This document shows positions 5,901 through 35,530 of a DNA stretch of 64,000 nucleotides, in pieces; positions within the stretch are counted from its first letter, which is position 1, and each line of letters begins with the position of its first letter. The stretch comes from Dimorphilus gyrociliatus (Eukaryota; Animalia; Annelida): positions 620,001 to 684,000 of the forward strand of contig CAJFCJ010000019.1 in NCBI GenBank assembly GCA_904063045.1, read 5' to 3'. The position numbers and the translations under genes were made by a program. Below the pieces are notes generated by a model that searched no databases, had not been told where the DNA came from, and saw nothing but the letters and a program-made list of their open reading frames with translations.

Positions 5901-6170
5901 ATGAATCGTGTACTGATATTCTTCGCTCTGGCCGTGGCTTGTATTGTTGTTGTGGATAGCATGCCACGTTATAGAGCCGCTGAATTATTTGAACTCTATC
6001 CGGAGTTATATGAAGCTGTATATGGGCCAGCTTTAAATAATGTTAAGAGGCGTTTACACGGAGGTCCTTTACCAGTGGCAACTCGTTTAGCTGGAGGTTT
6101 TGGGAACAAAATCGAAGGTGACCGCAATCAAGCACCAGATTTCAAGGGCATGAGATTTGGCCGAAAATAG
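5901..6170 (+). CDS. Neuropeptide precursor, NKY (neuropeptide KY / sNPF-PrRP-related) type, single amidated peptide ending KGMRF-amide
   Basis: Signal peptide MNRVLIFFALAVACIVVVDS, KRR cleavage site, peptide LHGGPLPVATRLAGGFGNKIEGDRNQAPDFKGMRF, amidation signal G-RK-stop. GGPLPVxTRL...KxMR(Y/F)a resembles annelid NKY as I recall it. AATAAA at 6215. Confidence 0.85.
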   Translation: MNRVLIFFALAVACIVVVDSMPRYRAAELFELYPELYEAVYGPALNNVKRRLHGGPLPVATRLAGGFGNKIEGDRNQAPDFKGMRFGRK

Positions 6171-9889: not shown

Positions 9890-11389
9890 TTAAACTACAC
9901 CTTTCTTCCTGGGGTTCTTCTTAGGTCTATGCACCTCTGCTGAGGTTATTAGAACACGTTTTTCAGAATCTGATTTTTTTACCATGACTGTTCTTCCACC
10001 AGAGCTAGTAAACTCAATAGAAGGTTTAAAATCTTCTTTTAATAAAGAAGCTAATTTGGAATGTTTCTTTTCCTGTTCAATTTTCAAAGAGATTTGTTTT
10101 TTTATAGGTTCTGGCGATGGAATAATAATTTCTTCAGTATCCGAATCACTATCAATTAATACTTCTACTTTCTCTTCAATTTTATTATTCGTATCATCAG
10201 TCTTAGCTTCATTTGATGTAATTTGTCTGTTTTCATCCTCAATCGTGCAAACACTATTAACAACACCCCTACTTTTAGTTGATTGATTGATTTCTTTACT
10301 TGTTTTTGTCGCAAAAATAGGTGGGTTCATTTCGTGTGGTTCAACTTTTTGTTCAGGTAGAAATCTTTCCATATACGTTTTAGCCAACTCGAAATCAAAG
10401 TCAAAACTTTCAGCAAGAAAACCAAATGTAAAATATCTAAATCTTGTTGAAAAGATTAGAAATAAGTAGAACTTTATGTTTGAATTGATACATTGGAACA
10501 TTATGTAGCAAATTTCCAAGTTTTGAAAGTAGTTTGAGTAATTTAGTATGTTATCTTCAAAAAAGCAATTGATATGAAATTTTATTGGAATATTCTCAGT
10601 CCAGACAGCAATTCTGTAACAAAGGAATGGAATCTCTGTAATTAATCTTAAAATTGAGACAATTGCTTGTAGTTTAACACTTCTTCCGTCTTTAAATTCC
10701 TCGGAATTTACTGAAATTAACGAACGGATTGACATAATTTTCACTTGTATAAATAGAGCCGAATTAACGGCTAGAATTAGCAACCATGGTATTAAAACAA
10801 AGATTATAACATAAGCGTATTTGTCGTAATATTGATAGCTCTGCTGATTATGTAGGTCAGTCGTGCATATAACTTCTCTTGATGAACCATCCTTAAAATC
10901 CATAACAACCACCCGAAATTGAAAATAATTTACAAAATGGAATACAACAACTACACCACTCACGGCGAATGCTAATTTAACGGCTTTCTTTACAGTGCTG
11001 TATCTGACGGACTTTTCAGCGTGTAATCCGAACATGTAACCGTCAACAGTTAGGGTGATTATTAAAGCAGACATAACAACTTGCAGACTTTGAGTTATAG
11101 GGAAGGCGTGGGCATAAAAGGTTGGAGATAGTGGAGATCGAGAACTAACTTGAGAATACTCCGAGGAGAGTAGCATTAACATTAGGATTGTATAGACAAT
11201 ATCGGCTAAACTCAAGAAAGTCATATAAACCGATGGAGGACTCTTCATCCGTTTTTGATTAAAGATGATTATCAACATCGAATTGCCTAATAGCCCAAAC
11301 GCAGCCAAACTTGGCATTAAAATACCAAATGCGATATGTTTAGAAGATCCAATTTCTTCTATCTCTCGAGTTTTTTCCGCTAAAGACAT
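9890..11389 (-). CDS. Rhodopsin-class peptide GPCR, FMRFamide/myosuppressin-receptor-like, intronless CDS
   Basis: Seven hydrophobic segments: GLLGN (TM1), LSLAD (TM2), TVDGY in place of DRY, IPWL (TM5), NSNIKFYLF (TM7). Long charged C-tail. First ATG at 11389. Confidence 0.8.
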   Translation of the reverse strand: MSLAEKTREIEEIGSSKHIAFGILMPSLAAFGLLGNSMLIIIFNQKRMKSPPSVYMTFLSLADIVYTILMLMLLSSEYSQVSSRSPLSPTFYAHAFPITQSLQVVMSALIITLTVDGYMFGLHAEKSVRYSTVKKAVKLAFAVSGVVVVFHFVNYFQFRVVVMDFKDGSSREVICTTDLHNQQSYQYYDKYAYVIIFVLIPWLLILAVNSALFIQVKIMSIRSLISVNSEEFKDGRSVKLQAIVSILRLITEIPFLCYRIAVWTENIPIKFHINCFFEDNILNYSNYFQNLEICYIMFQCINSNIKFYLFLIFSTRFRYFTFGFLAESFDFDFELAKTYMERFLPEQKVEPHEMNPPIFATKTSKEINQSTKSRGVVNSVCTIEDENRQITSNEAKTDDTNNKIEEKVEVLIDSDSDTEEIIIPSPEPIKKQISLKIEQEKKHSKLASLLKEDFKPSIEFTSSGGRTVMVKKSDSEKRVLITSAEVHRPKKNPRKKGVV

Positions 11390-15036: not shown

Positions 15037-15417
15037 TCACGTAAGGTCCACTTCTAATTCGTCTGAGTTTAGTAATGTCTTTAAGTAGTATGATAATTTA
15101 TTAGGAAAACTCTTTTTTCTCATATCTCTTTCCTTTTCAACTTGTTCCCTTGTTTCTTGATCCATAGCCATTTTTTCAGGGTCTGCTAACGCTCCTCTCC
15201 GCACTCTCATACGATTGCATTGAAGGGCTGAGCTAAAATATTTATTATCTGTTCGATTTACAAGAGTACAGTCTGAAAAACTCTTCTTCAAGGTATTCCT
15301 AGCATTAATATTGTCTTCTTCCGTTCTCTCTTCTCTTTTCCAACACCATTTCTCGTCAGCTTCATCATTGCTCACAGAATTTTGTAATTTATTCGGAGCT
15401 ATCTTTGACGTTTTCAT
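15037..15417 (-). CDS. Hypothetical 126-aa charged protein, no recognised family
   Basis: ATG-initiated 126-codon ORF in AT-rich flanks with protein-like composition and no overlapping gene. No homology recognised. Confidence 0.45.
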   Translation of the reverse strand: MKTSKIAPNKLQNSVSNDEADEKWCWKREERTEEDNINARNTLKKSFSDCTLVNRTDNKYFSSALQCNRMRVRRGALADPEKMAMDQETREQVEKERDMRKKSFPNKLSYYLKTLLNSDELEVDLT

Positions 15418-25008: not shown

Positions 25009-27843
25009 ATGTCGAAGCCGCTCTTTTTGAACACCAATGGTGAATTGGAGAATAAAATTAAAGAGCTCAGCTTATTAAAGAGCCCCGAAAGATCAGCTAG
25101 AAAAGAAGTAAAATACCTTGGTGACGATGATGACCACTCTTCGAGAGCTCCTAGGTCAGCTTTTTCACCCTCACCTCGTATGGATGAACTACAACGTTTC
25201 GAGCACAAGCATCAAGTTGTAGCGGAGATGTCTGCAGCCTACAAAAATCTATTGGTTTCCATTGGTGAAGACCCAGGCCGTCAAGGTTTGCTTAAGACAC
25301 CGGACAGAGCAGCCAAAGCTTTCCTCTACTTTACTAGAGGTTACGACGAGAAGATATCAGGTGATTTCTTATATTAAATTCGATTTTGGACTTTTGCCCT
25401 TGTAAGATAAGACAACAGTAACTTCGTAAATACATACTATTGTGTTTTTACTGAACGAAACATGAAAAGTCAGATGCCAATAAGCTGATCAATGTCGTTC
25501 GCATATTTGTCCCGTCTTTTCATTTCCGTCTTTTAGCTAGTAACGCCCACGCTGTGCATAATTGCCACGAAATTGGTAGGTTATATTTAGAAACACGCCG
25601 ATAGGCGGTCAGTGATCGCCCTAATTTTTATTCGACAAATTGTATAAGAATTGAGGCTGACATGGTAACCCGTTGATCACATTTCTTTCACTTTTTATTC
25701 CCCATAAGAGGAAAAGTTGGGAAAAAGTCATGAAATAGTTACAAGTTATAAATAATAACATTTAAAGGGAATTTACAAGAGGAGAAATAAAAAGATAATA
25801 GGAGTATTACTTCTTTTTTTTTCTAATATAAAAAGAATAAAAGATTTCTCAGATTTCTAGTTCATGTATAATAATATTTAATAATTTATCAATGCTCTAA
25901 TTACATTGAAATCCCTGTAATCTTTTATTGAATAATTATGAATGAAGAGTAAAAAACAAGAATATGTTGTTAAAACCGTAGGACTAATTAGACATATGAA
26001 AACTGTGTTTATAGTTTCGTTGGGAGACGAAATGATAGAACCTTACAGTTAATTAAAAGTTGAAAATTTATATTTATTGTTAAAAAGGAAAATTAAAAAG
26101 GTATATATAATGTTAATAAAGTAGCAGGTGCCCTTATGTACTCTTCTTTATGAGTTTCTTCTTTAATATTTCACTTTTTATTCTCTCACTCTCTCTCTAT
26201 CTCTCTCTTTCTATCTTATTATTCTCTAATCGAGTGTTTCTTATTTCATTAAAACTGAATATATATATGTCTTATAGATGTTCTAAACGATGCGATTTTC
26301 GACGAGGATACAGACGAAATGGTTATTGTTAAGAATATTGAAATGTTCTCAATGTGCGAGCATCATCTTGTTCCTTTTATTGGAAAGGTATTTGATCTTT
26401 CGATACATATTTTTCTTTTATTATTACGTACAGCGCCAATATTTATTTAATACTTTTTCTGTATTTAGGTATCAATTGGTTACTTGCCCAATAAAAGAGT
26501 AATAGGCTTAAGTAAATTAGCCAGGTATTTATAATTTCCTATCTTGATTTTCTTTCTTATTTTTGAGAATGAATAAAATTGTTTAATTAATTTAATTATA
26601 CATTGCAGAATTGTGGAGGTGTACAGTAGAAGATTGCAAGGTAAAAATGGAACTTACTTTTATTTGTTTATAATTAATAGATTAAAAAAAAAATTGAGAA
26701 AAGCAAAAAGAATAGAAAAGAGAAAATAACTCATTTTTTTTTAAGTTAAAGGGAAAACTAGTAGGAAACTAATTTCGATATAATCTAAAGAAAAATCTAG
26801 ACTTAAATAATAATAAGGGAAAATACAAATTCCGTTTTAAAATAACTGGAGTTTTTGTACGAGAACGCCGCATATATATCGACGCAAGCCCCAATCGAAT
26901 ATTGCAATAGCATGTTAATGAGGCAGCAATATTCAGCAATACAGTTTCTGTTTGCATGTTTGGACATTTTGGTCGCTATTTCAGTAATACAACATTTTGC
27001 CCGTATGTCGAAATATAAATATAACAATATAGTTGGTATTCTATCAGTTCAAGAACGGCTTTCAAAACAAATTGCTGAAGCGGTTGTTACTGCTGTTCAA
27101 CCATTCGGTGTTGCTGTCAACATTGAGGCAACGTAAGTTCCCAATGCACGTGTAAATTCTCAGAAAAGAGATGATGTTTGCATAGTGTGCATAACAGTAT
27201 ATTAGTTACTTTTTTATATTTTTCTGTAATTATTTATGAACGAATTAGGCCTGTAGCTTTTCAATGTTTTTTTTTATTATTATTGTTATTTTACTGCATT
27301 TTTATCCTTTCTCAATCAAGCTATTCCTTATTTTATTGTTTACCCTTCAATTTTTTTCGCAGTACAAGAACGTCTCACTAAACAAATAGCACTAGCGATT
27401 TTCGAAGCAATAAGTCCTGCAGGTGTCGCTGTTGTTTGCGAAGCTTCGTGAGTGTACTAAAAAAAAGCATATTTCTTTTTTTACATATATTCCTTTTGTT
27501 TCCTTATATATGTATATGTAGATATAGAATTAGCATGCACAGACTATCTTTCATATTAATTTTATAGAGTATGCAGTATGTTTATCCATATACTGCACTT
27601 ATAGATTAGCAATTGAAGAGTTTAACAGGACATTAAAAAGCTTAAATGCATCATGCATTGATAATTTGTACAGCTTTATATTCAATATTCAATTGCCTAT
27701 TTTCCTCTCCAATTAGGCATATGTGCATGGTGATGAGAGGCGTGCAGAAAATTAATAGTAGGACCATAACGAGCACAATGTTAGGCGTCTTCAGGGAAGA
27801 TCCCAAGACTAGAGAGGAATTTTTAACCTTGATTAAAGAATAA
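25009..27843 (+). CDS. GCH1: GTP cyclohydrolase 1; exons 25009-25360, 26278-26387, 26469-26524, 26609-26640, [27048-27132 OR 27363-27447], 27717-27843
   Basis: [65 protein letters not shown]. Internal exon sizes 110/56/32/85/127 match the vertebrate GCH1 structure as I recall it. Confidence 0.98.
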
Positions 27844-28471
27844 AACTCTTTGTTTGGTGATGGAATTCTTAAATACTCATATTCACGGAAAAGGGTATTT
27901 TATCCACATTTAAGGAAACAATTAAGTCCTGTTCAAATGGATATTAATGGAACAATTAAGGAACATTCATTTAATCTTATATTTTGTTTGAAAAAAAAAG
28001 TTTTTGCAGGCAAATCATGTAAATGTTGTTTACTAATTTTTCTGTAAATTTTAAGAAAAACCTGGGTAAAATTCAAATGAAAAATAGAATGAAGATGAAA
28101 AATGGCGAAAATGGGAATAATTTATTAAGTATAAATTAAATTTTCAACCACGACTAACCACTTGAAGAGAATAACAAGAAGCAATAATGAAATCAAGTTT
28201 ATCCTAATTTTCCTCTAATGATCATTTAATGTTGCCCTGCAAAAAATATATGTAGTAAGGTATTGTTTGTTTTGTTCTTGTCTTCCAAAAAATTATATAT
28301 GACAATTATGCTGATATTGTAATTTTACTTTGTATGAATAATCAATACACAATTGGTGCAGATTAATGAAAAATTATACCTATATATGCAACTGAGGAAC
28401 GAGAGAGTGGGAGAGACCTTCCGTTATTAATTCTATGAATAATTAATTTCCTTAAAGTTACGAGTAAAACA

Positions 28472-28479
28472 TGACGTCA
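28472..28479. promoter_or_regulatory. Perfect CRE (TGACGTCA) about 390 nt upstream of the micro-exon gene ATG
   Basis: Sequence match, plus a YY1-like AAAATGGCG near 28100. An 8-mer match alone is weak evidence. Confidence 0.3.
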
Positions 28480-28864
28480 ATTGTACTTTTTGAAAAGGTA
28501 TAGAAATAGTTATTAGCCCTAATATATTACTTATTAACGACTGTTTAAATTTATGAAAACAATATAAATAAATTCTGTTTATTATTGTGAATGGGAGAAG
28601 ATAAAACAACCTTATTCTGTCACTTTTCTTCCTTCTTCTCCTTCACCTTGTCCTTCTTCTTTTCCTTTTCCATCTTCTTTCCATCTTCTTTCCCTCCTTC
28701 AACTTGTTTCTCATTCTTTCTGTTCTCTTTATAATTCAGTATCGCTCTTGAAAATAGAAGCTAGCCTTTTGGGAGAGGCAAGTAGGAAGAGCAAATTAAA
28801 GGAAATTTCCAACTGTAAATCACTTTAATGAAATAATTGGAAACTTATAATCAATCTTCGTTTA

Positions 28865-30257
28865 ATGATAAATGAACAAATGAGTGATAATTCAGAACTT
28901 TCGGATATTATAAATATTGAAACTGTAAGATATTTCAAAATAAAACAATTAAAATCATACTATTGACCTTTTATATAAAAATAAAAAGCCAAGACAAGAT
29001 CCTCCTTATGCACTAGTAAGTTTTATAAGGATTCTTTTCTAAGACTTTATAAGACTTTATGTCAAATTTAATAATCTATTTTAATTATAAAATATAACCA
29101 TTTACAGAGGACAAGAACATCAATTGGAATTCCATTGAAAAATTCAGTAAGTTACAAGACAAGAATAAAACTAGTATTATAAATAATACGTAAATGTTAA
29201 TTAACTTTTAAACTTAATTATTAATTGACACATTCTAATAGATAAGCCTTTTTTAATTACATTTGCTAAATGTCTTAATTCTTAAAAGAAAAGTAGAGAA
29301 TTTGTTGTTTGCCGCTTCTCATTCGTGGGTAGAGGTTACTTTCTGTATATATATATATATATATATATATGCAGTATATTGTTTAATTAATTCTGAAAAT
29401 ACGTATAATATATTAATGTTCACTTTCTATCTTCTTAAGGGAAAAACTTCAACAAAAGACACTCAGGTCAGGGAACTTTTATAGTTTGTTTCCTTCTATA
29501 TTTTATGTATAGTGTGAATGCAGTTGTTCTCTAAACTAAGCTACTATTTTATCTTTCTCTTTCTTATCTATATTGTTAGCGACGACGTTCTGTGATGATT
29601 AGGAAAAGAGTTGAAGGTGAAGGAGCGAAATCACCCACTTTTGTATACATTAAAATAGCTTATTACCTATAATGATCATTTAGTAATGAGAAAATTTTTT
29701 TCTTCCTCCCTATAAAAGGTTGAACCAGCTAAGAGACGAGTAATCAATACTTTATTAATTATTTCATTTTATTTACATTTTTCTTTTTAAGTTGTTTTGA
29801 TCGACTTTTGGCTCAATATTTTTTTACTATTAAAAAAATTATATACTCTTATAGTTTTGTTCTAAATTTAATTCTTTTTCTATTCTTCTCTCTATCTATA
29901 TCTGTTTTAAACTTATTTCCCTTCTACTACAGCGTCGAACCTCTCTTAACCAATTTTCGGATGATGAAAATGTAATTTCTTAATTTTAATCATATTTTTA
30001 TAAATTCTTGTTCTCTTTGATTTTGATAATCTATAATTTTTTTCTTCTTTGCAGAGCCTCTCGCAGTCACTTCAAGTAAAGAGACTAACTTCTGTTAGTG
30101 TAAGGGAAAATAATTGAGGTTCTTAGAAAATTATACTAAACGTAATTCTGCTTTCTCTCCCTTTATCGTCAATAACAGGCACATGATCAAGTTGATAATA
30201 GGGCGGCCTTTGAATCGTCAACTGATCAAATGATAGACAATGTAAAGTATATATATG

Positions 30258-30288
<31 letters not shown>

Positions 30289-31033
30289 GACGCGCATACA
30301 AATAAATTTTAGTTCTTTTGTTCTAATATTATTGCTAACTTATTCCCTTAGGTAACAAATAAAAAGAAATCGCCTCTTCATAGGGTGAACTTTTATTATT
30401 AAAAAACTAAAGAAAGACGTTTTTTACTAACTAATTTTTGTTCTTCGATAGCTGAAGGAAGTCTTGAATTTTTCACCTAGTGAACCGATTAAATCGCTCG
30501 TAAGTAATTAGTAATCGATTTCGAGATATAGCTCACCCAGTTGAATTTAATAGGCTGACAATAATTCAGGAACGAGTAACAATAAAAAAACAATAGGTGG
30601 GAAACAAGACTACGCAACGCCACCATCAAATAGAAGCGTTAAATGGTTAGACTTGAATAAATATTAATAAAAATTTCTCTATAAACACTTGATTAAAAGA
30701 CTACTGCAAAGTGTTGATCAGAGATAGAAAGAATGAATTCAGTGATTATCTCTGGAGAGAGAAGTGGAGGAATATTTTATGTTTTTTTTTTCATCCTTTG
30801 AAATTAAAAGTTAATAAAAAAGAGTGTTTTACAGGATCAAGCGGGTTGACAGTGAATTATATAAAATAAATTTAGTTCGTTTCACATATTAGTTTATTGT
30901 GTTTTTTTTCACTTTTTATGATTAAATTATATTTAATGTAAACAGGGACTTTGGGATAGATATAAAGTAGCAAATAGACAATATAATGCCTTACTAGCCC
31001 AGAGAGTAAATATTTTAACACGCCATTTTTTTC

Positions 31034-31064
<31 letters not shown>

Positions 31065-32795
31065 CTAGTAGATGTGCTATGAAAATGATTTAATAATAAA
31101 ATTTTTCATTAGCCATGTGATAGATGTAGACTGAAGAAAAAATACGAGGTTAGTATAACAAATATTATATTTCATGACATATTATGACTGTATAAGGGTA
31201 AACAATATTATTTTTATACTATAGGAGGAAGGGATGATGGTTGATGTAAGAATTAGAAAAAAAAATAACAAATAAGCCTCGTTTATGTAAAAAAAAAAAC
31301 TACTCCTTTATTGTCTATCATTATTTTTCCTTCCAACCTCACGCCTCTTTCTTTGCTTTACCCCATCTCTCTTTGCTTGTTTTGTCTCTTTCTCTCGCTC
31401 TGTATATGTTCCTTTGTAACATTATATAAATATATATATCTATATATATATATGATATATATGTACATTTAATTTTATCTCTTTCTCATACATACCGTCA
31501 ATCCTGTTTTCTTACTACAAATCGCAGAATTTAGAATTGGAAATTGACGTTAGTATACTCCGTTTGTTTCGTTTTAAATTGATGTAGATGTTTTGAATAA
31601 ATAGCTTCTTTTTTTCTTTTCTCCAACCCTACAATATATACATATATATATTATAATTAAATAATACAGAAACTAAAGGAAGCGGAAGAAGTACGTTTAC
31701 AAATTATATTTCTTTTTTTTTGTGTTTATTAAGCTATTACAATAAAAAAAAGATTCTACAAAGCTGCTTTTTAATGGGAATGATGCTAATTTGTTTTTAT
31801 TATATTAAAGTAGAAAAAACATAGAAAATTGAATTAATTTCGTTCATATAGTCTAAGATAAATTAGTATAAGTAATTTATATATACTTGGCTAGTATTCT
31901 TTCGTCTTATATATTTTATTTTATTTATTTTAAAGGCTGAAGAAACTAGGAAAGAAAGTCTTCATGTTGAAATATACGTGAGCTAGTTGAATTTTGATAA
32001 ATCGTTAAAATAGACTGTGAAACCAATAGCAATTGTCACGAAGAAAAAGTGTTTTAAAAAGGAGGGTAATTAATAAGAAAAAGGTTAAATATTTCAAATA
32101 AGTCTCTTTTTTATTTCTTGTTTGTAAATGAAAGAACAGTATAGTTAAGATAAAGGTTTAGTAAATTGCTCTATTTCCGTAATTTACTCTTAAAACTAAG
32201 TAATTGTAATAGAATTTTAGAAGGTAATGAATTAGGAGATGATCCTCTCAAACTAAACTAACTATAAGTACGTTTTGTTTATTACATAGGAGATGGATAA
32301 TCAGGAAAATGAGATATGCGGAATGAATAAATCTTGTATGGAATGTGAAGAAGTTATAAGTCGATACGAAAAGGTAAGTTTCCTTAATCTTAAAGATGAC
32401 AAAAAGTGACATTTTATGAAGAGATGTTTCTTTTTAAAGGATATAAAAGAAGCTCAAAAGGTAATCATTGTCTAAGTATTTCTTATGACTTATACTTTTA
32501 TTATGGATAAAGATTAAGGGGATTTTTTTATCTCTTTATTTTGCCTTTTTCACATTTCTTTCTTATACTTAGAGAATGAATGATGAGCTTATTTATGCAA
32601 ATGAGGTGAGTTAGGGTAAACGAAGGGTGAATTTTTATAATAAAAAAGATGTTTATAAAAATAGAAACATTTGTACTAATATTTTCCTTTAATATCTCTT
32701 TTTTTATACTAAATGAAAATAAGGAAAAGAGTCGAATAAAGAAAGAGTTATTAGCAGTCCTACATGACAGTTTGAATCAACTTGGCCGAAGATAA
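28865..32795 (+). CDS. Cryptic ~23-exon micro-exon gene encoding a ~301-aa protein with a basic, disordered N-half and a coiled-coil C-half; no recognised family
   Basis: Exons: 28865-28924, 29108-29146, 29440-29466, 29580-29642, 29719-29739, 29933-29971, 30055-30075, 30179-30241, 30352-30384, 30452-30499, 30554-30596, 30835-30851, 30946-31005, 31113-31148, 31225-31245, 31528-31548, 31670-31690, 31936-31977, 32135-32155, 32290-32373, 32440-32460, 32573-32605, 32724-32795. Each internal exon is flanked by AG and GT, and they join into a stop-free 906-nt frame. Confidence 0.7.
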
Positions 32796-33679
32796 TGACC
32801 TCTTTCCTTAACCTTTTAATTCTAAATCTCTTTCCTGGAAATGCGCAAATTTTAGAAAAGATAGACCGAACAAAATAGGGATAAAAGAGATTTAAATCGT
32901 TTTAAAGTATTAATATATTTCTTTTTAACACAAATGTATAATACTTAGTATTTACATACAAATATATATTATATACATATAAAAACGGATTAAAATTGTG
33001 TGAATAATTCTGTCTCGCCATTTCTTCTTTCTTTCTACCTATCTATTTATAAGTATTCGTGCAATGATGTATTTATACCTTTCATGTTCGTTTTTATTGC
33101 CTCTGATATCTTACTTTAAGTACTATGCTTCTTCTCTAATCTATTCATATTTCAAAATTTGATTAGATTTATTTAAAACCTATAATGGCTCAGTGTTTTT
33201 TCTTGTTTTTTTTTGTCAATTATTCTATTTGAAATAACGTGATATATATTTATATACAATGGGAAAAAACAAAAAAAAGCTCTTACTAATATTTAGATTT
33301 ATTTAGGCTTAATTTTCTTGTTTTTTAATATTTGTATAAACTCTTGATTTATTTTGGATAATTTGTTAATATCATGTTGAGTTTATTATATGTTCTTTAT
33401 GAGTGAAATTTTTAAAAAGGATGAATTAATTAAACTTTTGTTAATGATGTATTTGTAAGTTGTAATCGAACACTGTTCGAAAAACGTAGTGTCCATATGA
33501 GCATACTCTCACGTGAATATTGATAAATATTGGTCAAGACATATATTGGAATCTTTGAAGTATAGAGTGTAAATATTACAATTAACAGCATCGATAAAAC
33601 AACATTGATTTATGTTGTAAGTGCATTTTTAACAACTTACGATTCTTACACTTGAAGTAGTGTTTATTTTAAAACAAAA

Positions 33680-35530
33680 ATGAGCGATAATGAAAGACAT
33701 AAAAAATGTGAAGTGTGCAATGAGAAACAATCTAAATATACTTGTCCAAAGTGTTCTGTTCGTACATGCTCATTAGAATGCGTAAAACAGCATAAAAAAG
33801 CTGTAGACTGTGATGGAAAAAGAGATAAAACTGCATACTTATCCCTGGATAAATTTAACGATAACGTTCTTTACAGCGGTAGGTTTTCTTTTTATCATGA
33901 TACATAATTTTATAAGGGTAAGACATTAGCCTTCATATTTTCACATAATATTTTCAGATTATTACTTTCTGGAAGACGTTAATAGAGCTGTAGAAAATTC
34001 TGAAAGGGGCCCAAGGCACTCGAATCGCCTAAAGCTTCCGGAAAAAGTATTTATCTATCGCGCTGTCAAGCCACTGTTTTAATAATTTCATTTCTACATT
34101 AACAGCGTGAAAGACTGTGCAAAAATGCGAAAAAGATAGGAGTCACTTTAGAATTTTTACCAAAGGGTATGGCAAAAAATAGAAGAAACAAGTCTTTTTA
34201 TAACAACGAGTAATATCATTTTTGTTCTCTATTTCTCTTTATATTCCATCATCTAGTGATTTATTATAATTATTTATCCAAGATGAAAAAAAATTCCATT
34301 ACTTGTAGATACTAAAATATTTTATACCAGAGGAATGGGATAACTTAATTTCATCGTACTTTTCTTAATTATACACCATTTTTGAATCATTATTTAATTA
34401 TGGTAATTAGGAGATAACTTTATAGTTTATCATAGTATCCCGTATCCCCGGGAAAAAGAAATGTTTTATCTTTCACCATTCCTTTTTCTATCTAAAGCTT
34501 CCTTCAATAGTGTAATTCATTTCTTATAACAGACAAAAGCAAATAATATGGACGATTGAGTGGCGTCTGCCTGAGATATCCGTGAAATCAATTTGTGATG
34601 GGTAATTATATTTAGAGAATAATGTAGTGAATAAAATTATTAAAAAAAAAAAGAATTTTCTCTTTTTTTCTCTCTTCTTTCTTTTTCCATTCCTTATAAT
34701 CCGTACTGTATATTTTTAGATTTATGGGAGATACTAAACTCAAAGAAGCTTTTACTAATTTTACATCCGAAAGAAATCCCGTTATCAAACACAAAATAGA
34801 GGAATTAACAAACAAATCAGATTATAAGGGAATTTTTTTCGTCTTATTTAGAGCTGAAAAATCCAACGGAAACAGGTAAGGATCCAGTTAATAACCCTTT
34901 ATATTTATTGTGTACTTTCTATAAACGTTGATGACAAATGCTCGTCACTCTTGTTTCTAATCTCGAATGCTGGTATAACGAGACCAGCTGTGAATTACCC
35001 TGCGAGTGTTGTACAAGCTGAAGAAAATCTAATGCTACTAACCTTTTACTTGTTGTTACATACGTCTAAATAATTGTCAGTGTAACATGAATATAAAGGA
35101 AAACTGATGAAAAATTACTAAACCTTTTCGTTCCTTATTTTTCGTTTCCAGAAAATAATTGCAATTAATTTTTTATCTTTAAAATGCTATTCTATTACCC
35201 GCTTGACTAAAACACTTTCTATTTATTATAACAGATATTATTCGTTAGATCTGAATAAGAGTATATGTGAGAATTTGCGAGGAAAAACAGTAATCGAATA
35301 TCCCTGTTTTATCTTGGTTACCAGCAAATCACTCGACGAATATAAATTATTAAATAGAATATCCGTTGCAGGTAAACGAAAAAATAACCTTATATTTATT
35401 GTAAAAACACCGAAAGACTGCTTTCTTTTTGTATCTTATTTTAGACGTTCTGAAAGACGAAAAAGAAGAAGGTGAAGTAACGGAAAGCGAAGAAGAATTG
35501 GGCTTTGTTATTTCCGACGAAGATTTATAA
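33680..35530 (+). CDS. ZNHIT6: Box C/D snoRNA biogenesis protein 1 (zinc finger HIT domain 6), 7 exons
   Basis: zf-HIT CEVCNEKQSKYTCPKCSVRTCSLECVKQHK..CDGKRDKT, then DYYFLEDV, LEFLPKGMAKNRRNKS, IIWTIEW, YSLDLNKSICENLRGKTVIEYP. Acidic last exon ends at 35530. Confidence 0.93.

What the first reader, a model, noticed from the sequence alone, without database searches (positions are those of the whole stretch)
28865..32795. Hidden micro-exon gene in an apparently empty 4-kb gap between GCH1 and ZNHIT6
Seen: the ORF track shows essentially nothing here. About 23 short purine-rich islands (17-84 nt) are bounded by AG and GT splice signals, mostly with a pyrimidine tract upstream, and join into one stop-free 906-nt frame from ATG 28865 to TAA 32795. 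Product: MINEQMSDNSELSDIINIET RTRTSIGIPLKNS GKTSTKDTQ RRRSVMIRKRVEGEGAKSPTF VEPAKRR RRTSLNQFSDDEN SLSQSLQ AHDQVDNRAAFESSTDQMIDN VTNKKKSPLHR LKEVLNFSPSEPIKSL ADNNSGTSNNKKTIG SSGLT GLWDRYKVANRQYNALLAQR PCDRCRLKKKYE EEGMMVD NLELEID KLKEAEE AEETRKESLHVEIY NSIVKIK EMDNQENEICGMNKSCMECEEVISRYEK DIKEAQK RMNDELIYANE EKSRIKKELLAVLHDSLNQLGRR. All junctions but one (30596/30835) are phase 0, so almost any exon can be skipped without a frameshift. Established: Schistosoma micro-exon genes use symmetric tiny exons to generate variant proteins. Inference: this is an unannotated, possibly lineage-specific combinatorial micro-exon gene. The NLS-like basic runs, SP sites and upstream perfect CRE hint at a nuclear or germline role. 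Caveat: exons were picked by eye, and 30554-30851 is ambiguous.
Basis: partly seen in the sequence, partly recalled or inferred. Interest (0 to 1): 0.9.

Follow-up and report, generated by a model that had tools for sequence, protein, structure and literature searches.

The report
Real micro-exon gene, partly mismodelled
The "empty" gap between GCH1 and ZNHIT6 holds a real, transcribed and spliced gene made of many tiny exons, encoding an orphan disordered-plus-coiled-coil protein.

Summary
The exon chain is in the sequence exactly as described. Its length alone is not beyond chance: phase-0 AG..GT chains in dinucleotide shuffles average 721 nt, maximum 1278.

RNA makes most of it real. Five junctions are contradicted:
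- Exon 19 is really 32030-32083, not 32135-32155.
- Exon 11 runs to 30645 and joins directly to 31113, so exons 12 and 13 have no RNA.

Exons 1-5 have no RNA support but look coding by codon usage (+42 bits).

The 30645>31113 join puts the N-terminal Ser/Lys/Arg-rich half and the 135-aa coiled-coil half in different frames. The 906-nt ORF is therefore unsupported.

Fifteen of 16 RNA-supported exons are multiples of 3, and 8 are multiples of 21, one or more heptads.

The product has no signal peptide, no seen exon-skipping isoforms, and no homologue in Pfam, PDB or the 5.8-billion-protein collection. It is an orphan small-exon gene, not a MEG.

The scan had already noted the heptad exons on this stretch (s1-080702) and a similar gene elsewhere in this genome (s1-080730).

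The parts
28865..28924 (+). No RNA support; probable but unverified 5' coding exon.
   Evidence: Zero depth in X1. Codon-usage LLR +7.8 bits in frame, against -30 and -26.
29108..29146 (+).
   Evidence: Zero depth in X1. LLR 0.49 per codon, 96th percentile of decoys.
29440..29466 (+).
   Evidence: Zero depth in X1. LLR 0.55 per codon.
29580..29642 (+).
   Evidence: Covered only by an unspliced contig, 29490-29692, depth 3.8. LLR +14.7 bits, GC 0.44.
29719..29739 (+).
   Evidence: Zero depth in X1. LLR 1.17 per codon.
29933..29971 (+). Exon 6. Donor confirmed by RNA; acceptor not seen.
   Evidence: Joint 29971>30055, GT..AG, depth 23.
30055..30075 (+). Exon 7 (21 nt). Acceptor confirmed.
   Evidence: Joint 29971>30055.
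30179..30241 (+). Exon 8 (63 nt). Covered, but its junctions are not among the 15 joints shown.
   Evidence: Depth bin 30140-30339 fits exon 8 plus contig 30116-30221.
30352..30384 (+). Exon 9 (33 nt). Donor confirmed.
   Evidence: Joint 30384>30452.
30452..30499 (+). Exon 10 (48 nt). Both ends confirmed.
   Evidence: Joints 30384>30452 and 30499>30554.
30554..30645 (+). Its last three bases, ATG 30643-30645, open the downstream coiled-coil frame.
   Evidence: Joint 30645>31113, GT..AG, depth 15.1. The contig across 30499>30554 runs past 30596 without a branch. Frames.
30835..30851 (+). Not supported as an exon.
   Evidence: Lies inside an unspliced contig, 30616-30862. No joint at 30596, 30835 or 30851 among those shown.
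30946..31005 (+). No RNA; possible cassette exon.
   Evidence: Zero depth, since bin 30940-31139 is explained by exon 14 alone. LLR +8.2 bits, 86th percentile of decoys. All top-scoring in-frame bridges use it.
31113..31148 (+). Exon 14 (36 nt). Both ends confirmed. The upstream frame stops here after 8 codons.
   Evidence: Joints 30645>31113 and 31148>31225. Translation.
31225..31245 (+). Exon 15 (21 nt, one heptad).
   Evidence: Joints 31148>31225 and 31245>31528. Also an intron-retaining contig, 31223-31377.
31528..31548 (+). Exon 16 (21 nt).
   Evidence: Joints 31245>31528 and 31548>31670, depth 28.5.
31670..31690 (+). Exon 17 (21 nt).
   Evidence: Joint 31548>31670. The same contig goes on to exon 18.
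31936..31977 (+). Exon 18 (42 nt).
   Evidence: Joint 31977>32030. Acceptor inferred from contig continuity and zero depth over 31740-31935.
32030..32083 (+). True exon 19' (54 nt, a basic 18-residue stretch).
   Evidence: Joints 31977>32030 and 32083>32290, GT..AG, depth 28.5. Open in the coiled-coil frame.
32135..32155 (+). Rejected.
   Evidence: No depth, and skipped by joint 32083>32290. Codon LLR -1.6 bits, decoy-like.
32290..32373 (+). Exon 20 (84 nt, four heptads).
   Evidence: Joints 32083>32290 and 32373>32440.
32440..32460 (+). Exon 21 (21 nt).
   Evidence: Joints 32373>32440 and 32460>32573.
32573..32605 (+). Exon 22 (33 nt).
   Evidence: Joints 32460>32573 and 32605>32724.
32724..33036 (+). 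Last exon: coding to the TAA at 32793-32795, then about 240 nt of 3' UTR.
   Evidence: Contig 32722-33036. ATTAAA at 32989.
28360..28432 (-). Antisense spliced transcript, downstream exon.
   Evidence: Joint 28432/28611 with CT..AC ends, which is GT..AG on the minus strand; depth 18.3.
28611..28812 (-). Antisense transcript, middle exon. Overlaps the presumed promoter and 5' UTR of the + gene.
   Evidence: Contig piece 28611-28812 with CT..AC joints on both sides. Canonical minus-strand splice sites and no long ORF.
30432..30458 (-). Antisense transcript, upstream exon. At least 27 nt seen; it may run up to about 30862.
   Evidence: Joint 28812/30432, CT..AC. Extra depth over introns 9-10 and contig 30616-30862 fit a longer exon (inference).
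28472..28479 (.). No evidence of function.
   Evidence: It lies in the antisense transcript's intron, 386 nt upstream of ATG 28865.

Best explanation
This is an ordinary spliceosomal, protein-coding gene on the + strand of the annelid assembly GCA_904063045.1. Window position p equals CAJFCJ010000019.1 position 620000+p. They are separated by 52-467-nt GT..AG introns that are almost all phase 0, and the transcript ends near 33036.

It encodes two modules. One is a Ser/Lys/Arg/Asn-rich, probably disordered N-terminal part with basic NLS-like runs (exons 1-11'). The other is a roughly 135-residue heptad-repeat coiled coil with a basic insert (exons 14-23). Exon borders in the coiled coil fall on heptad borders.

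In the only RNA data available, the two modules are joined 30645>31113, which puts them in different frames. The upstream frame stops 8 codons into exon 14. The coiled-coil frame opens with the ATG formed by the last three bases of exon 11'.

I take the locus to make a nuclear, dimerising scaffold-type protein. I take the seen isoform to be either a truncating or switch isoform, with an unseen 3n+1-nt bridge (for example through 30835-30844/30874 and 30946-31005) giving the fused protein.

Shown: transcription, splice sites, frames, codon bias and lack of homologues. Inferred: the 5' exons, the in-frame isoform, the disorder, coiled-coil dimer and nuclear role.
For: - Run X1 behaves as RNA. 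The GCH1 intron 27448-27716 is spliced out at depth 2085 with no intron depth.
- Twelve + strand GT..AG joints lie inside the locus, at depth 15-28.
- All donors are GT and all acceptors AG.
- Frames are open across RNA-defined exons: 98 codons (p = 0.0125) and 134 codons (0 of 2000 shuffles).
- Codon-usage LLR is +61 and +64 bits in those frames, against -16/-90 and -58/-60 in the others.
- Fifteen of 16 exons are multiples of 3 (p = 8e-7), and 8 are multiples of 21 (p = 4e-4). A single heptad register runs through most of the C-terminal part.
- Only weak coiled-coil-type Pfam matches appear, Leu_zip at 17 bits and Tropomyosin at 14 bits, both below cut-off.
- No Rfam family lies in the introns.
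- D. gyrociliatus is reported to lack operons and trans-splicing (PMC7854359).
Against: - Exons 1, 2, 3 and 5 have zero depth in X1, although downstream exons reach 15-28.
- No in-frame link between the two halves was seen. 9791 hypothetical in-frame bridges exist, so none is compelling.
- Unspliced contigs have about the same depth as spliced ones at several introns.
- An antisense spliced transcript overlaps the 5' half, and contigs carry no strand.
- The purine richness of the upstream exons could reflect splicing enhancers rather than coding.
- Only one RNA data set, held as contigs, could be laid. Five joints were not displayed.
- The function is inferred from composition only.
Confidence: 0.75

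Rival explanations
1. The frame break is the native state. The locus makes two separate proteins. One is a roughly 175-aa disordered basic protein that ends in the retained intron after 30645 or 8 codons into exon 14. The other is a 135-aa coiled-coil protein started at ATG 30643-30645, from transcripts with an internal start site.
For: - The direct join 30645>31113 is the only link seen, and a stop (TAA 30640-30642) immediately precedes that ATG.
- No other ATG lies in the 170 nt of exons 9-11' upstream of it.
- An unspliced contig, 30616-30862, holds a stop after 7 codons, and six AATAAA/ATTAAA signals lie in 30656-30870.
- Depth roughly doubles from exon 15 onward, 28.5 against 15.1.
Against: - No internal start site is shown.
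- The ATG has a weak context (T at -3).
- Contig depths are poor measures of expression.
- The unspliced contig may belong to the antisense transcript.
- Operons are reported absent in this species (PMC7854359).
Confidence: 0.25
2. One reading: a schistosome-like micro-exon gene whose symmetric exons are skipped in combinations to produce a family of variant proteins.
For: - Exons are tiny and symmetric: 15 of 16 are multiples of 3, and nearly all introns are phase 0.
- The gene has no homologues.
- Notes of this scan report other repeat-per-exon genes in this genome.
Against: - No exon-skipping joint is among the 15 shown.
- A single contig runs through exons 15-20 without a branch.
- No signal peptide: maximum Kyte-Doolittle(9) is 0.59.
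- MEGs are secreted, schistosome-specific, and most of their exons are 15 nt (bioRxiv 10.1101/2023.06.21.545858).
- A follow-up on a sister case (s1-080230) also found no skipping.
Confidence: 0.07
3. A spliced non-coding RNA locus (sense plus antisense) whose open frames are by-products of purine-rich splicing enhancers.
For: - No homologue in any library.
- The seen mRNA has no single long ORF.
- There is an antisense spliced partner without an ORF.
- Intron retention is high.
Against: - The 134-codon open run across ten RNA-defined exons was never reached in 2000 shuffles.
- Codon bias is frame-specific.
- Hydrophobic residues keep a heptad pattern.
- Exon lengths being multiples of 3 (p = 8e-7) has no reason in a non-coding RNA.
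Confidence: 0.05
4. No gene: a chance chain of AG..GT-bounded open segments in AT-rich DNA.
For: Shuffled sequence gives phase-0 chains of 721 +/- 241 nt, so 906 nt is not exceptional. One reader exon was indeed a decoy.
Against: Spliced RNA contigs match nine junctions to the base.
Confidence: 0.01

Closest known systems
Schistosoma micro-exon genes (MEGs)
   Same: Many consecutive very short exons whose lengths are multiples of three. The exons are symmetric, automatic ORF scans miss the gene, and there are no relatives outside the lineage.
   Different: - MEG products carry an N-terminal signal peptide and are secreted. Here there is none.
- MEG isoform families arise by skipping central exons. 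None is seen here.
- MEG exons are mostly 15 nt with introns up to 5 kb. Here exons are 21-92 nt and introns 52-467 nt.
- There is no sequence similarity, and MEGs are specific to Schistosomatidae (10.1101/2023.06.21.545858).
Fibrillar collagen genes with 54-nt (and 45/108-nt) exons
   Same: Exon length is a whole number of structural repeats, and introns sit in phase 0 at repeat borders. That is textbook knowledge, not tested here.
   Different: The repeat here is the 7-residue coiled-coil heptad (21, 42, 63 and 84-nt exons), not Gly-X-Y. No sequence similarity between exon units was found that would show tandem exon duplication.
The 33-nt-exon orphan gene of the same genome (scan note s1-080230) and the 20-exon heptad gene (s1-080730)
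   Same: Same genome. Small phase-0 exons each carry one structural repeat. The first is an orphan for which a follow-up found no evidence of exon shuffling.
   Different: Those are different loci whose sequences I could not read. Whether they are paralogues of this gene is untested. This gene's exons are not sequence repeats of each other.
Pfam PF15294 Leu_zip and PF00261 Tropomyosin
   Same: Weak local resemblance over the coiled-coil part (17.3 and 14.2 bits).
   Different: Both are far below the curated cut-offs (28.2 and 38.6 bits). This is generic coiled-coil similarity, not membership.

Membership tests
Schistosoma-type micro-exon gene (MEG) | Most internal exons very short (3-81 nt) and multiples of three (symmetric) | tested here: met
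   RNA-supported exons are 21-92 nt. Fifteen of 16 are multiples of 3, and 14 of 15 RNA-supported introns are phase 0.
Schistosoma-type micro-exon gene (MEG) | N-terminal signal peptide; secreted product | tested here: not met
   There is no hydrophobic stretch at either candidate N-terminus: maximum Kyte-Doolittle(9) is 0.59 and 0.52. This is a crude test, not SignalP.
Schistosoma-type micro-exon gene (MEG) | Protein variants made by skipping central exons | tested here: inconclusive
   One RNA run, held as contigs that drop rare variants. No skipping joint is among the 15 shown, and one contig runs through exons 15-20. Five joints were not displayed.
Schistosoma-type micro-exon gene (MEG) | Sequence relationship to the schistosome MEG families | tested here: not met
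   No hit at all for either half in the 5.8-billion-protein collection or Pfam.
Coiled-coil protein (structural class, not a family) | Continuous heptad pattern of hydrophobic a/d positions over tens of residues | tested here: met
   My own windowed a/d scoring gives one register over about 90 residues. Pfam gives only weak coiled-coil hits.
snoRNA/miRNA host gene | Introns carry known small RNA genes | tested here: not met
   Rfam finds only sub-threshold matches on (TA)n microsatellites.
Operon / bicistronic trans-spliced unit | Spliced-leader addition between cistrons | not testable with these tools
   No reads could be inspected, only contigs. The genome paper reports no operons or spliced leaders in this species (PMC7854359).

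The most novel reading that the evidence does not exclude
The coiled coil is built as a register-keeping kit. Introns sit at the same heptad position (exons of 21, 21, 21, 42 / 84, 21 nt), so whole heptads can be added, lost or skipped without breaking the helix register. A single 3n+1-nt bridge at the only asymmetric site decides whether the disordered N-terminal module is fused to the coiled coil. If the other repeat-per-exon genes noted in this genome share this design, a miniature annelid would have its own class of modular micro-exon genes for intracellular structural proteins, distinct from schistosome MEGs.
Probability: 0.15. Interest if true: 0.6.

Novelty: new variant of a known kind. 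Interest (0 to 1): 0.35.

Why it matters
Practically, it adds a probably unannotated expressed gene, and an antisense transcript, to a well-used compact annelid genome. It also corrects the exon model.

As a method check, an eye-built chain of AG..GT islands was about three-quarters right. But its length was no better than shuffled DNA, and one of its exons was a decoy. RNA and codon bias, not chain length, must carry such calls.

Biologically, the exon lengths in whole heptads and the frame break at the only asymmetric junction are unusual. If they recur in the other repeat-per-exon genes of this genome, they would bear on how introns and repeat proteins co-evolve. On present evidence this is a curiosity rather than a new mechanism.

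Tried and rejected
- **Reaching the public annotation of the locus.** The assembly and its gene calls are in the collection (anchored on the single-exon GPCR at 9893-11389), but a locus reaches only 10 kb. Neighbours within 10 kb are multi-exon, so their exact proteins have no reference. A representative search with ZNHIT6 exon 1 did not return the window's own protein. Neither did a profile search seeded with that exon. Annotation status therefore rests only on the blank searches. Those calls cover products of 74-236 and 96-306 aa; a 312-aa model would be missed.
- **Per-exon Pfam scan.** Nothing found.
- **Scan of metagenome contigs for the spliced 20/21 junction.** Nothing found.
- **Tandem exon duplication.** No repeats apart from (TA)n.
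- **Assembly indel in the A7 run of exon 11' as the cause of the frame break.** Rejected. X1 contigs match the genome without gaps, and the downstream frame has stops just before its ATG.
- **A hidden 10-nt micro-exon inside the 30645>31113 joint.** Unlikely. The two sides overlap by one letter ('both' = 1), and no inserted letters are listed for X1. The tool does mark 'between: not known'.
This came from memory only. Pfam gives nothing, so I dropped it.
- **Structure prediction of the spliced coiled-coil ORF.** The 301-aa reader protein was never sent to any tool because it has no reference.
- **Loose ends of X1 contigs at 29780, 31634 and 33044.** They match nothing in the window. I left them as unexplained; they are probably repeats or chimeric contigs.
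Full report
**What is there.** The window is AT-rich animal DNA, with GC 0.26-0.27 around the finding. GCH1 ends at 27843, and X1 contigs carry its 3' UTR to at least 28289. ZNHIT6 starts at 33680. Each exon is preceded by AG and followed by GT, and together they make 906 nt without a stop. All junctions but 30596/30835 are phase 0. A look-up of the single-exon GPCR at 9893-11389 places the window on NCBI assembly GCA_904063045.1, contig CAJFCJ010000019.1, at position 620000 + window position. An earlier scan note (s1-080230) names the species as the miniature annelid Dimorphilus gyrociliatus. I did not verify the name with a tool, but the genome paper (PMC7854359) describes a matching compact genome.

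**Is the chain more than chance?** On length alone it is not. A dynamic programme takes any AG as acceptor and any GT as donor, with exons of 15-90 nt, introns of 50-300 nt and phase 0 only. It finds chains of 721 +/- 241 nt (maximum 1278) in 100 dinucleotide shuffles of the region, and 1386 nt in the real sequence.

**RNA evidence.** Only one read-laying run was allowed. I laid four runs on 27340-33339.
- Run X1 (2017, organism A, Logan contigs) behaves as RNA. The GCH1 intron 27448-27716 is removed at depth 2085, and the intron itself has no depth.
- Inside the finding, X1 shows twelve + strand GT..AG joints at depth 15-28.
- Junction 31690/31936 follows from one contig (depth 28.5) that holds the joints on both sides, and from zero depth over 31740-31935.
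- The last exon runs to about 33036.
- The three metatranscriptome runs (coral and marine) hold only GCH1's last exon and 3' UTR from a relative (90-99% alike; the 3' UTR contig about 93%), plus low-complexity matches.

- After exon 18 the RNA goes 31977>32030 and 32083>32290. The real exon 19' is therefore 32030-32083 (54 nt, basic, open in frame).
- Exon 11 does not end at 30596. The contig across 30499>30554 runs past that point, and the exon ends at 30645 (92 nt) and joins straight to 31113. Exon 12 lies only inside an unspliced contig, 30616-30862.
- Exons 1, 2, 3 and 5 have zero depth. Exon 4 is covered only by an unspliced contig of depth 3.8. The tool warns that a hole proves nothing, so these exons are unverified rather than refuted.

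**Reading frames.** With the RNA-defined exons, the mRNA carries two long frames.
- The downstream frame is closed by TAA 30640-30642. It opens with ATG 30643-30645, the last three bases of exon 11', and runs 135 codons to TAA 32793-32795.
- An assembly indel cannot explain this, because the contigs match the genome and the downstream frame has stops just upstream of its ATG.

Both frames look coding.
- Open runs of that length occur in 1.25% of dinucleotide shuffles for the upstream part and in 0 of 2000 for the downstream part.
- A codon-usage log-likelihood was trained on ten long coding ORFs of the window (about 3,300 codons) against this gene's introns. It gives +61 bits (other frames -16, -90) and +64 bits (other frames -58, -60).
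Stop-free AG..GT decoys from the introns average -0.17 per codon.
- I therefore rate exons 1-5 as probably real (about 0.65) and exon 13 as open (+8 bits, 86th percentile of decoys).
- Between exon 11 and exon 14 there are 9791 possible in-frame GT-AG bridges. The best-scoring ones use the confirmed donor 30645, a 10- or 40-nt exon starting at 30835, and exon 13. None has RNA support.

**Exon architecture.** Fifteen of the 16 RNA-supported exons are multiples of three (binomial p = 8e-7). Eight of them are multiples of 21 (p = 4e-4 given multiples of three). In the C-terminal part the lengths are 36, 21, 21, 21, 42, 54, 84, 21, 33 and 72 nt. A simple a/d scoring finds one heptad register over about 90 residues. 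Exons 15-19' start at one heptad position, and after the 18-residue exon, exons 20-23 start at another. The exon units are not sequence repeats of each other; only (TA)n microsatellites repeat.

**What the product is.**
- Neither half has a Pfam family. The coiled-coil ORF gets only sub-threshold Leu_zip, Tropomyosin, MuF_C and Churchill matches, and the N-terminal composite gets none.
- Neither half finds a protein in the 5.8-billion collection within the length windows searched, 74-236 aa and 96-306 aa. Neither finds a PDB chain.
- That collection holds this assembly's gene calls. The gene is therefore probably unannotated or annotated in a very different form. A model of about 312 aa would have escaped both searches.
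- There is no signal-peptide-like hydrophobic stretch and no known RNA family in the introns.
- From composition, the N-terminal part is Ser/Lys/Arg/Asn-rich with basic runs, and the C-terminal part is a coiled coil with a basic 18-residue insert. A nuclear, dimerising scaffold role is my inference, not a result.

**Comparison with MEGs.** Schistosome MEGs are defined by symmetric exons of 3-81 nt (mostly 15 nt), an N-terminal signal peptide, secretion, isoform families made by skipping central exons, and restriction to Schistosomatidae (bioRxiv 10.1101/2023.06.21.545858). This gene shares only the first feature. The signal peptide and sequence kinship were tested and not met, and skipping was not seen. 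It resembles a MEG in gene anatomy but is not a member. The analogy with collagen's repeat-length exons fits the heptad-length exons better.

**Other transcripts at the locus.** One X1 contig (depth 18.3) joins 28360-28432, 28611-28812 and 30432-30458 through CT..AC gaps, which are canonical introns on the minus strand. The splice sites are good and there is no long ORF. This is a spliced antisense RNA. It may also account for part of the 'unspliced' depth over 30432-30862. Other unspliced contigs (30116-30221, and 31223-31377, which starts in exon 14) show real intron retention on the sense strand. GCH1 next door shows none.

**Verdict.** The single-ORF model, two to three exons and the combinatorial MEG reading are not supported. 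The open questions are the 5' end, how or whether the two coding halves are joined in frame, and whether heptad-phased exons are a recurrent design in this genome.

Noticed in passing
window 28360-28432, 28611-28812, 30432-30458 (minus strand): A spliced antisense transcript with canonical minus-strand introns and no long ORF. It is convergent with the GCH1 3' end and overlaps the 5' half and presumed promoter of the + gene.
   Followed up: partly
window 26611-26638, 27050-27133, 27361-27447, 27717-27843: GCH1 has two alternative copies of one exon (5a at 27050-27133, 5b at 27361-27447). In X1, the letters before 27361 are those of 26611-26638, so exon 4 joins 5b and skips 5a, and 5b joins the last exon (27447>27717, depth 2085). 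This supports mutually exclusive use, as scan note s1-081178 proposed.
   Followed up: partly
window 27717-28303: Coral and marine metatranscriptomes (X2-X4) hold GCH1's last exon and 3' UTR from a relative (90-99% alike; the 3' UTR contig about 93%). A close relative of this worm lives in those samples. GCH1 is very highly expressed in X1 (depth over 2000).
   Followed up: no
window 29344-29372, 30244-30295, 31024-31072, 31430-31460, 31634-31650: (TA)n microsatellites sit in at least five introns of the gene. Rfam reports them as sub-threshold mir-297 and mir-1277 matches, which are artefacts.
   Followed up: yes
window 29780 (also 31634 and 33044): X1 contigs fit the window from these points but continue with 185-255 letters found nowhere in the 64-kb window. 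The depth in bin 29740-29939 (88) is several times that of the gene. This may be an intronic repeat expressed from elsewhere, or chimeric contigs.
   Followed up: partly
window 30352-30645: Exons 9, 10 and 11' contain no ATG in any frame for 170 nt before the ATG that ends exon 11'. Roughly 3-4 would be expected from composition, by my rough estimate.
   Followed up: no
L001 (window about 1-21400): The public annotation of this contig includes small single-exon products without a Pfam family: 126 aa at window 15037-15417 and 89 aa at 5901-6170. The pipeline does keep short orphan ORFs.
   Followed up: no
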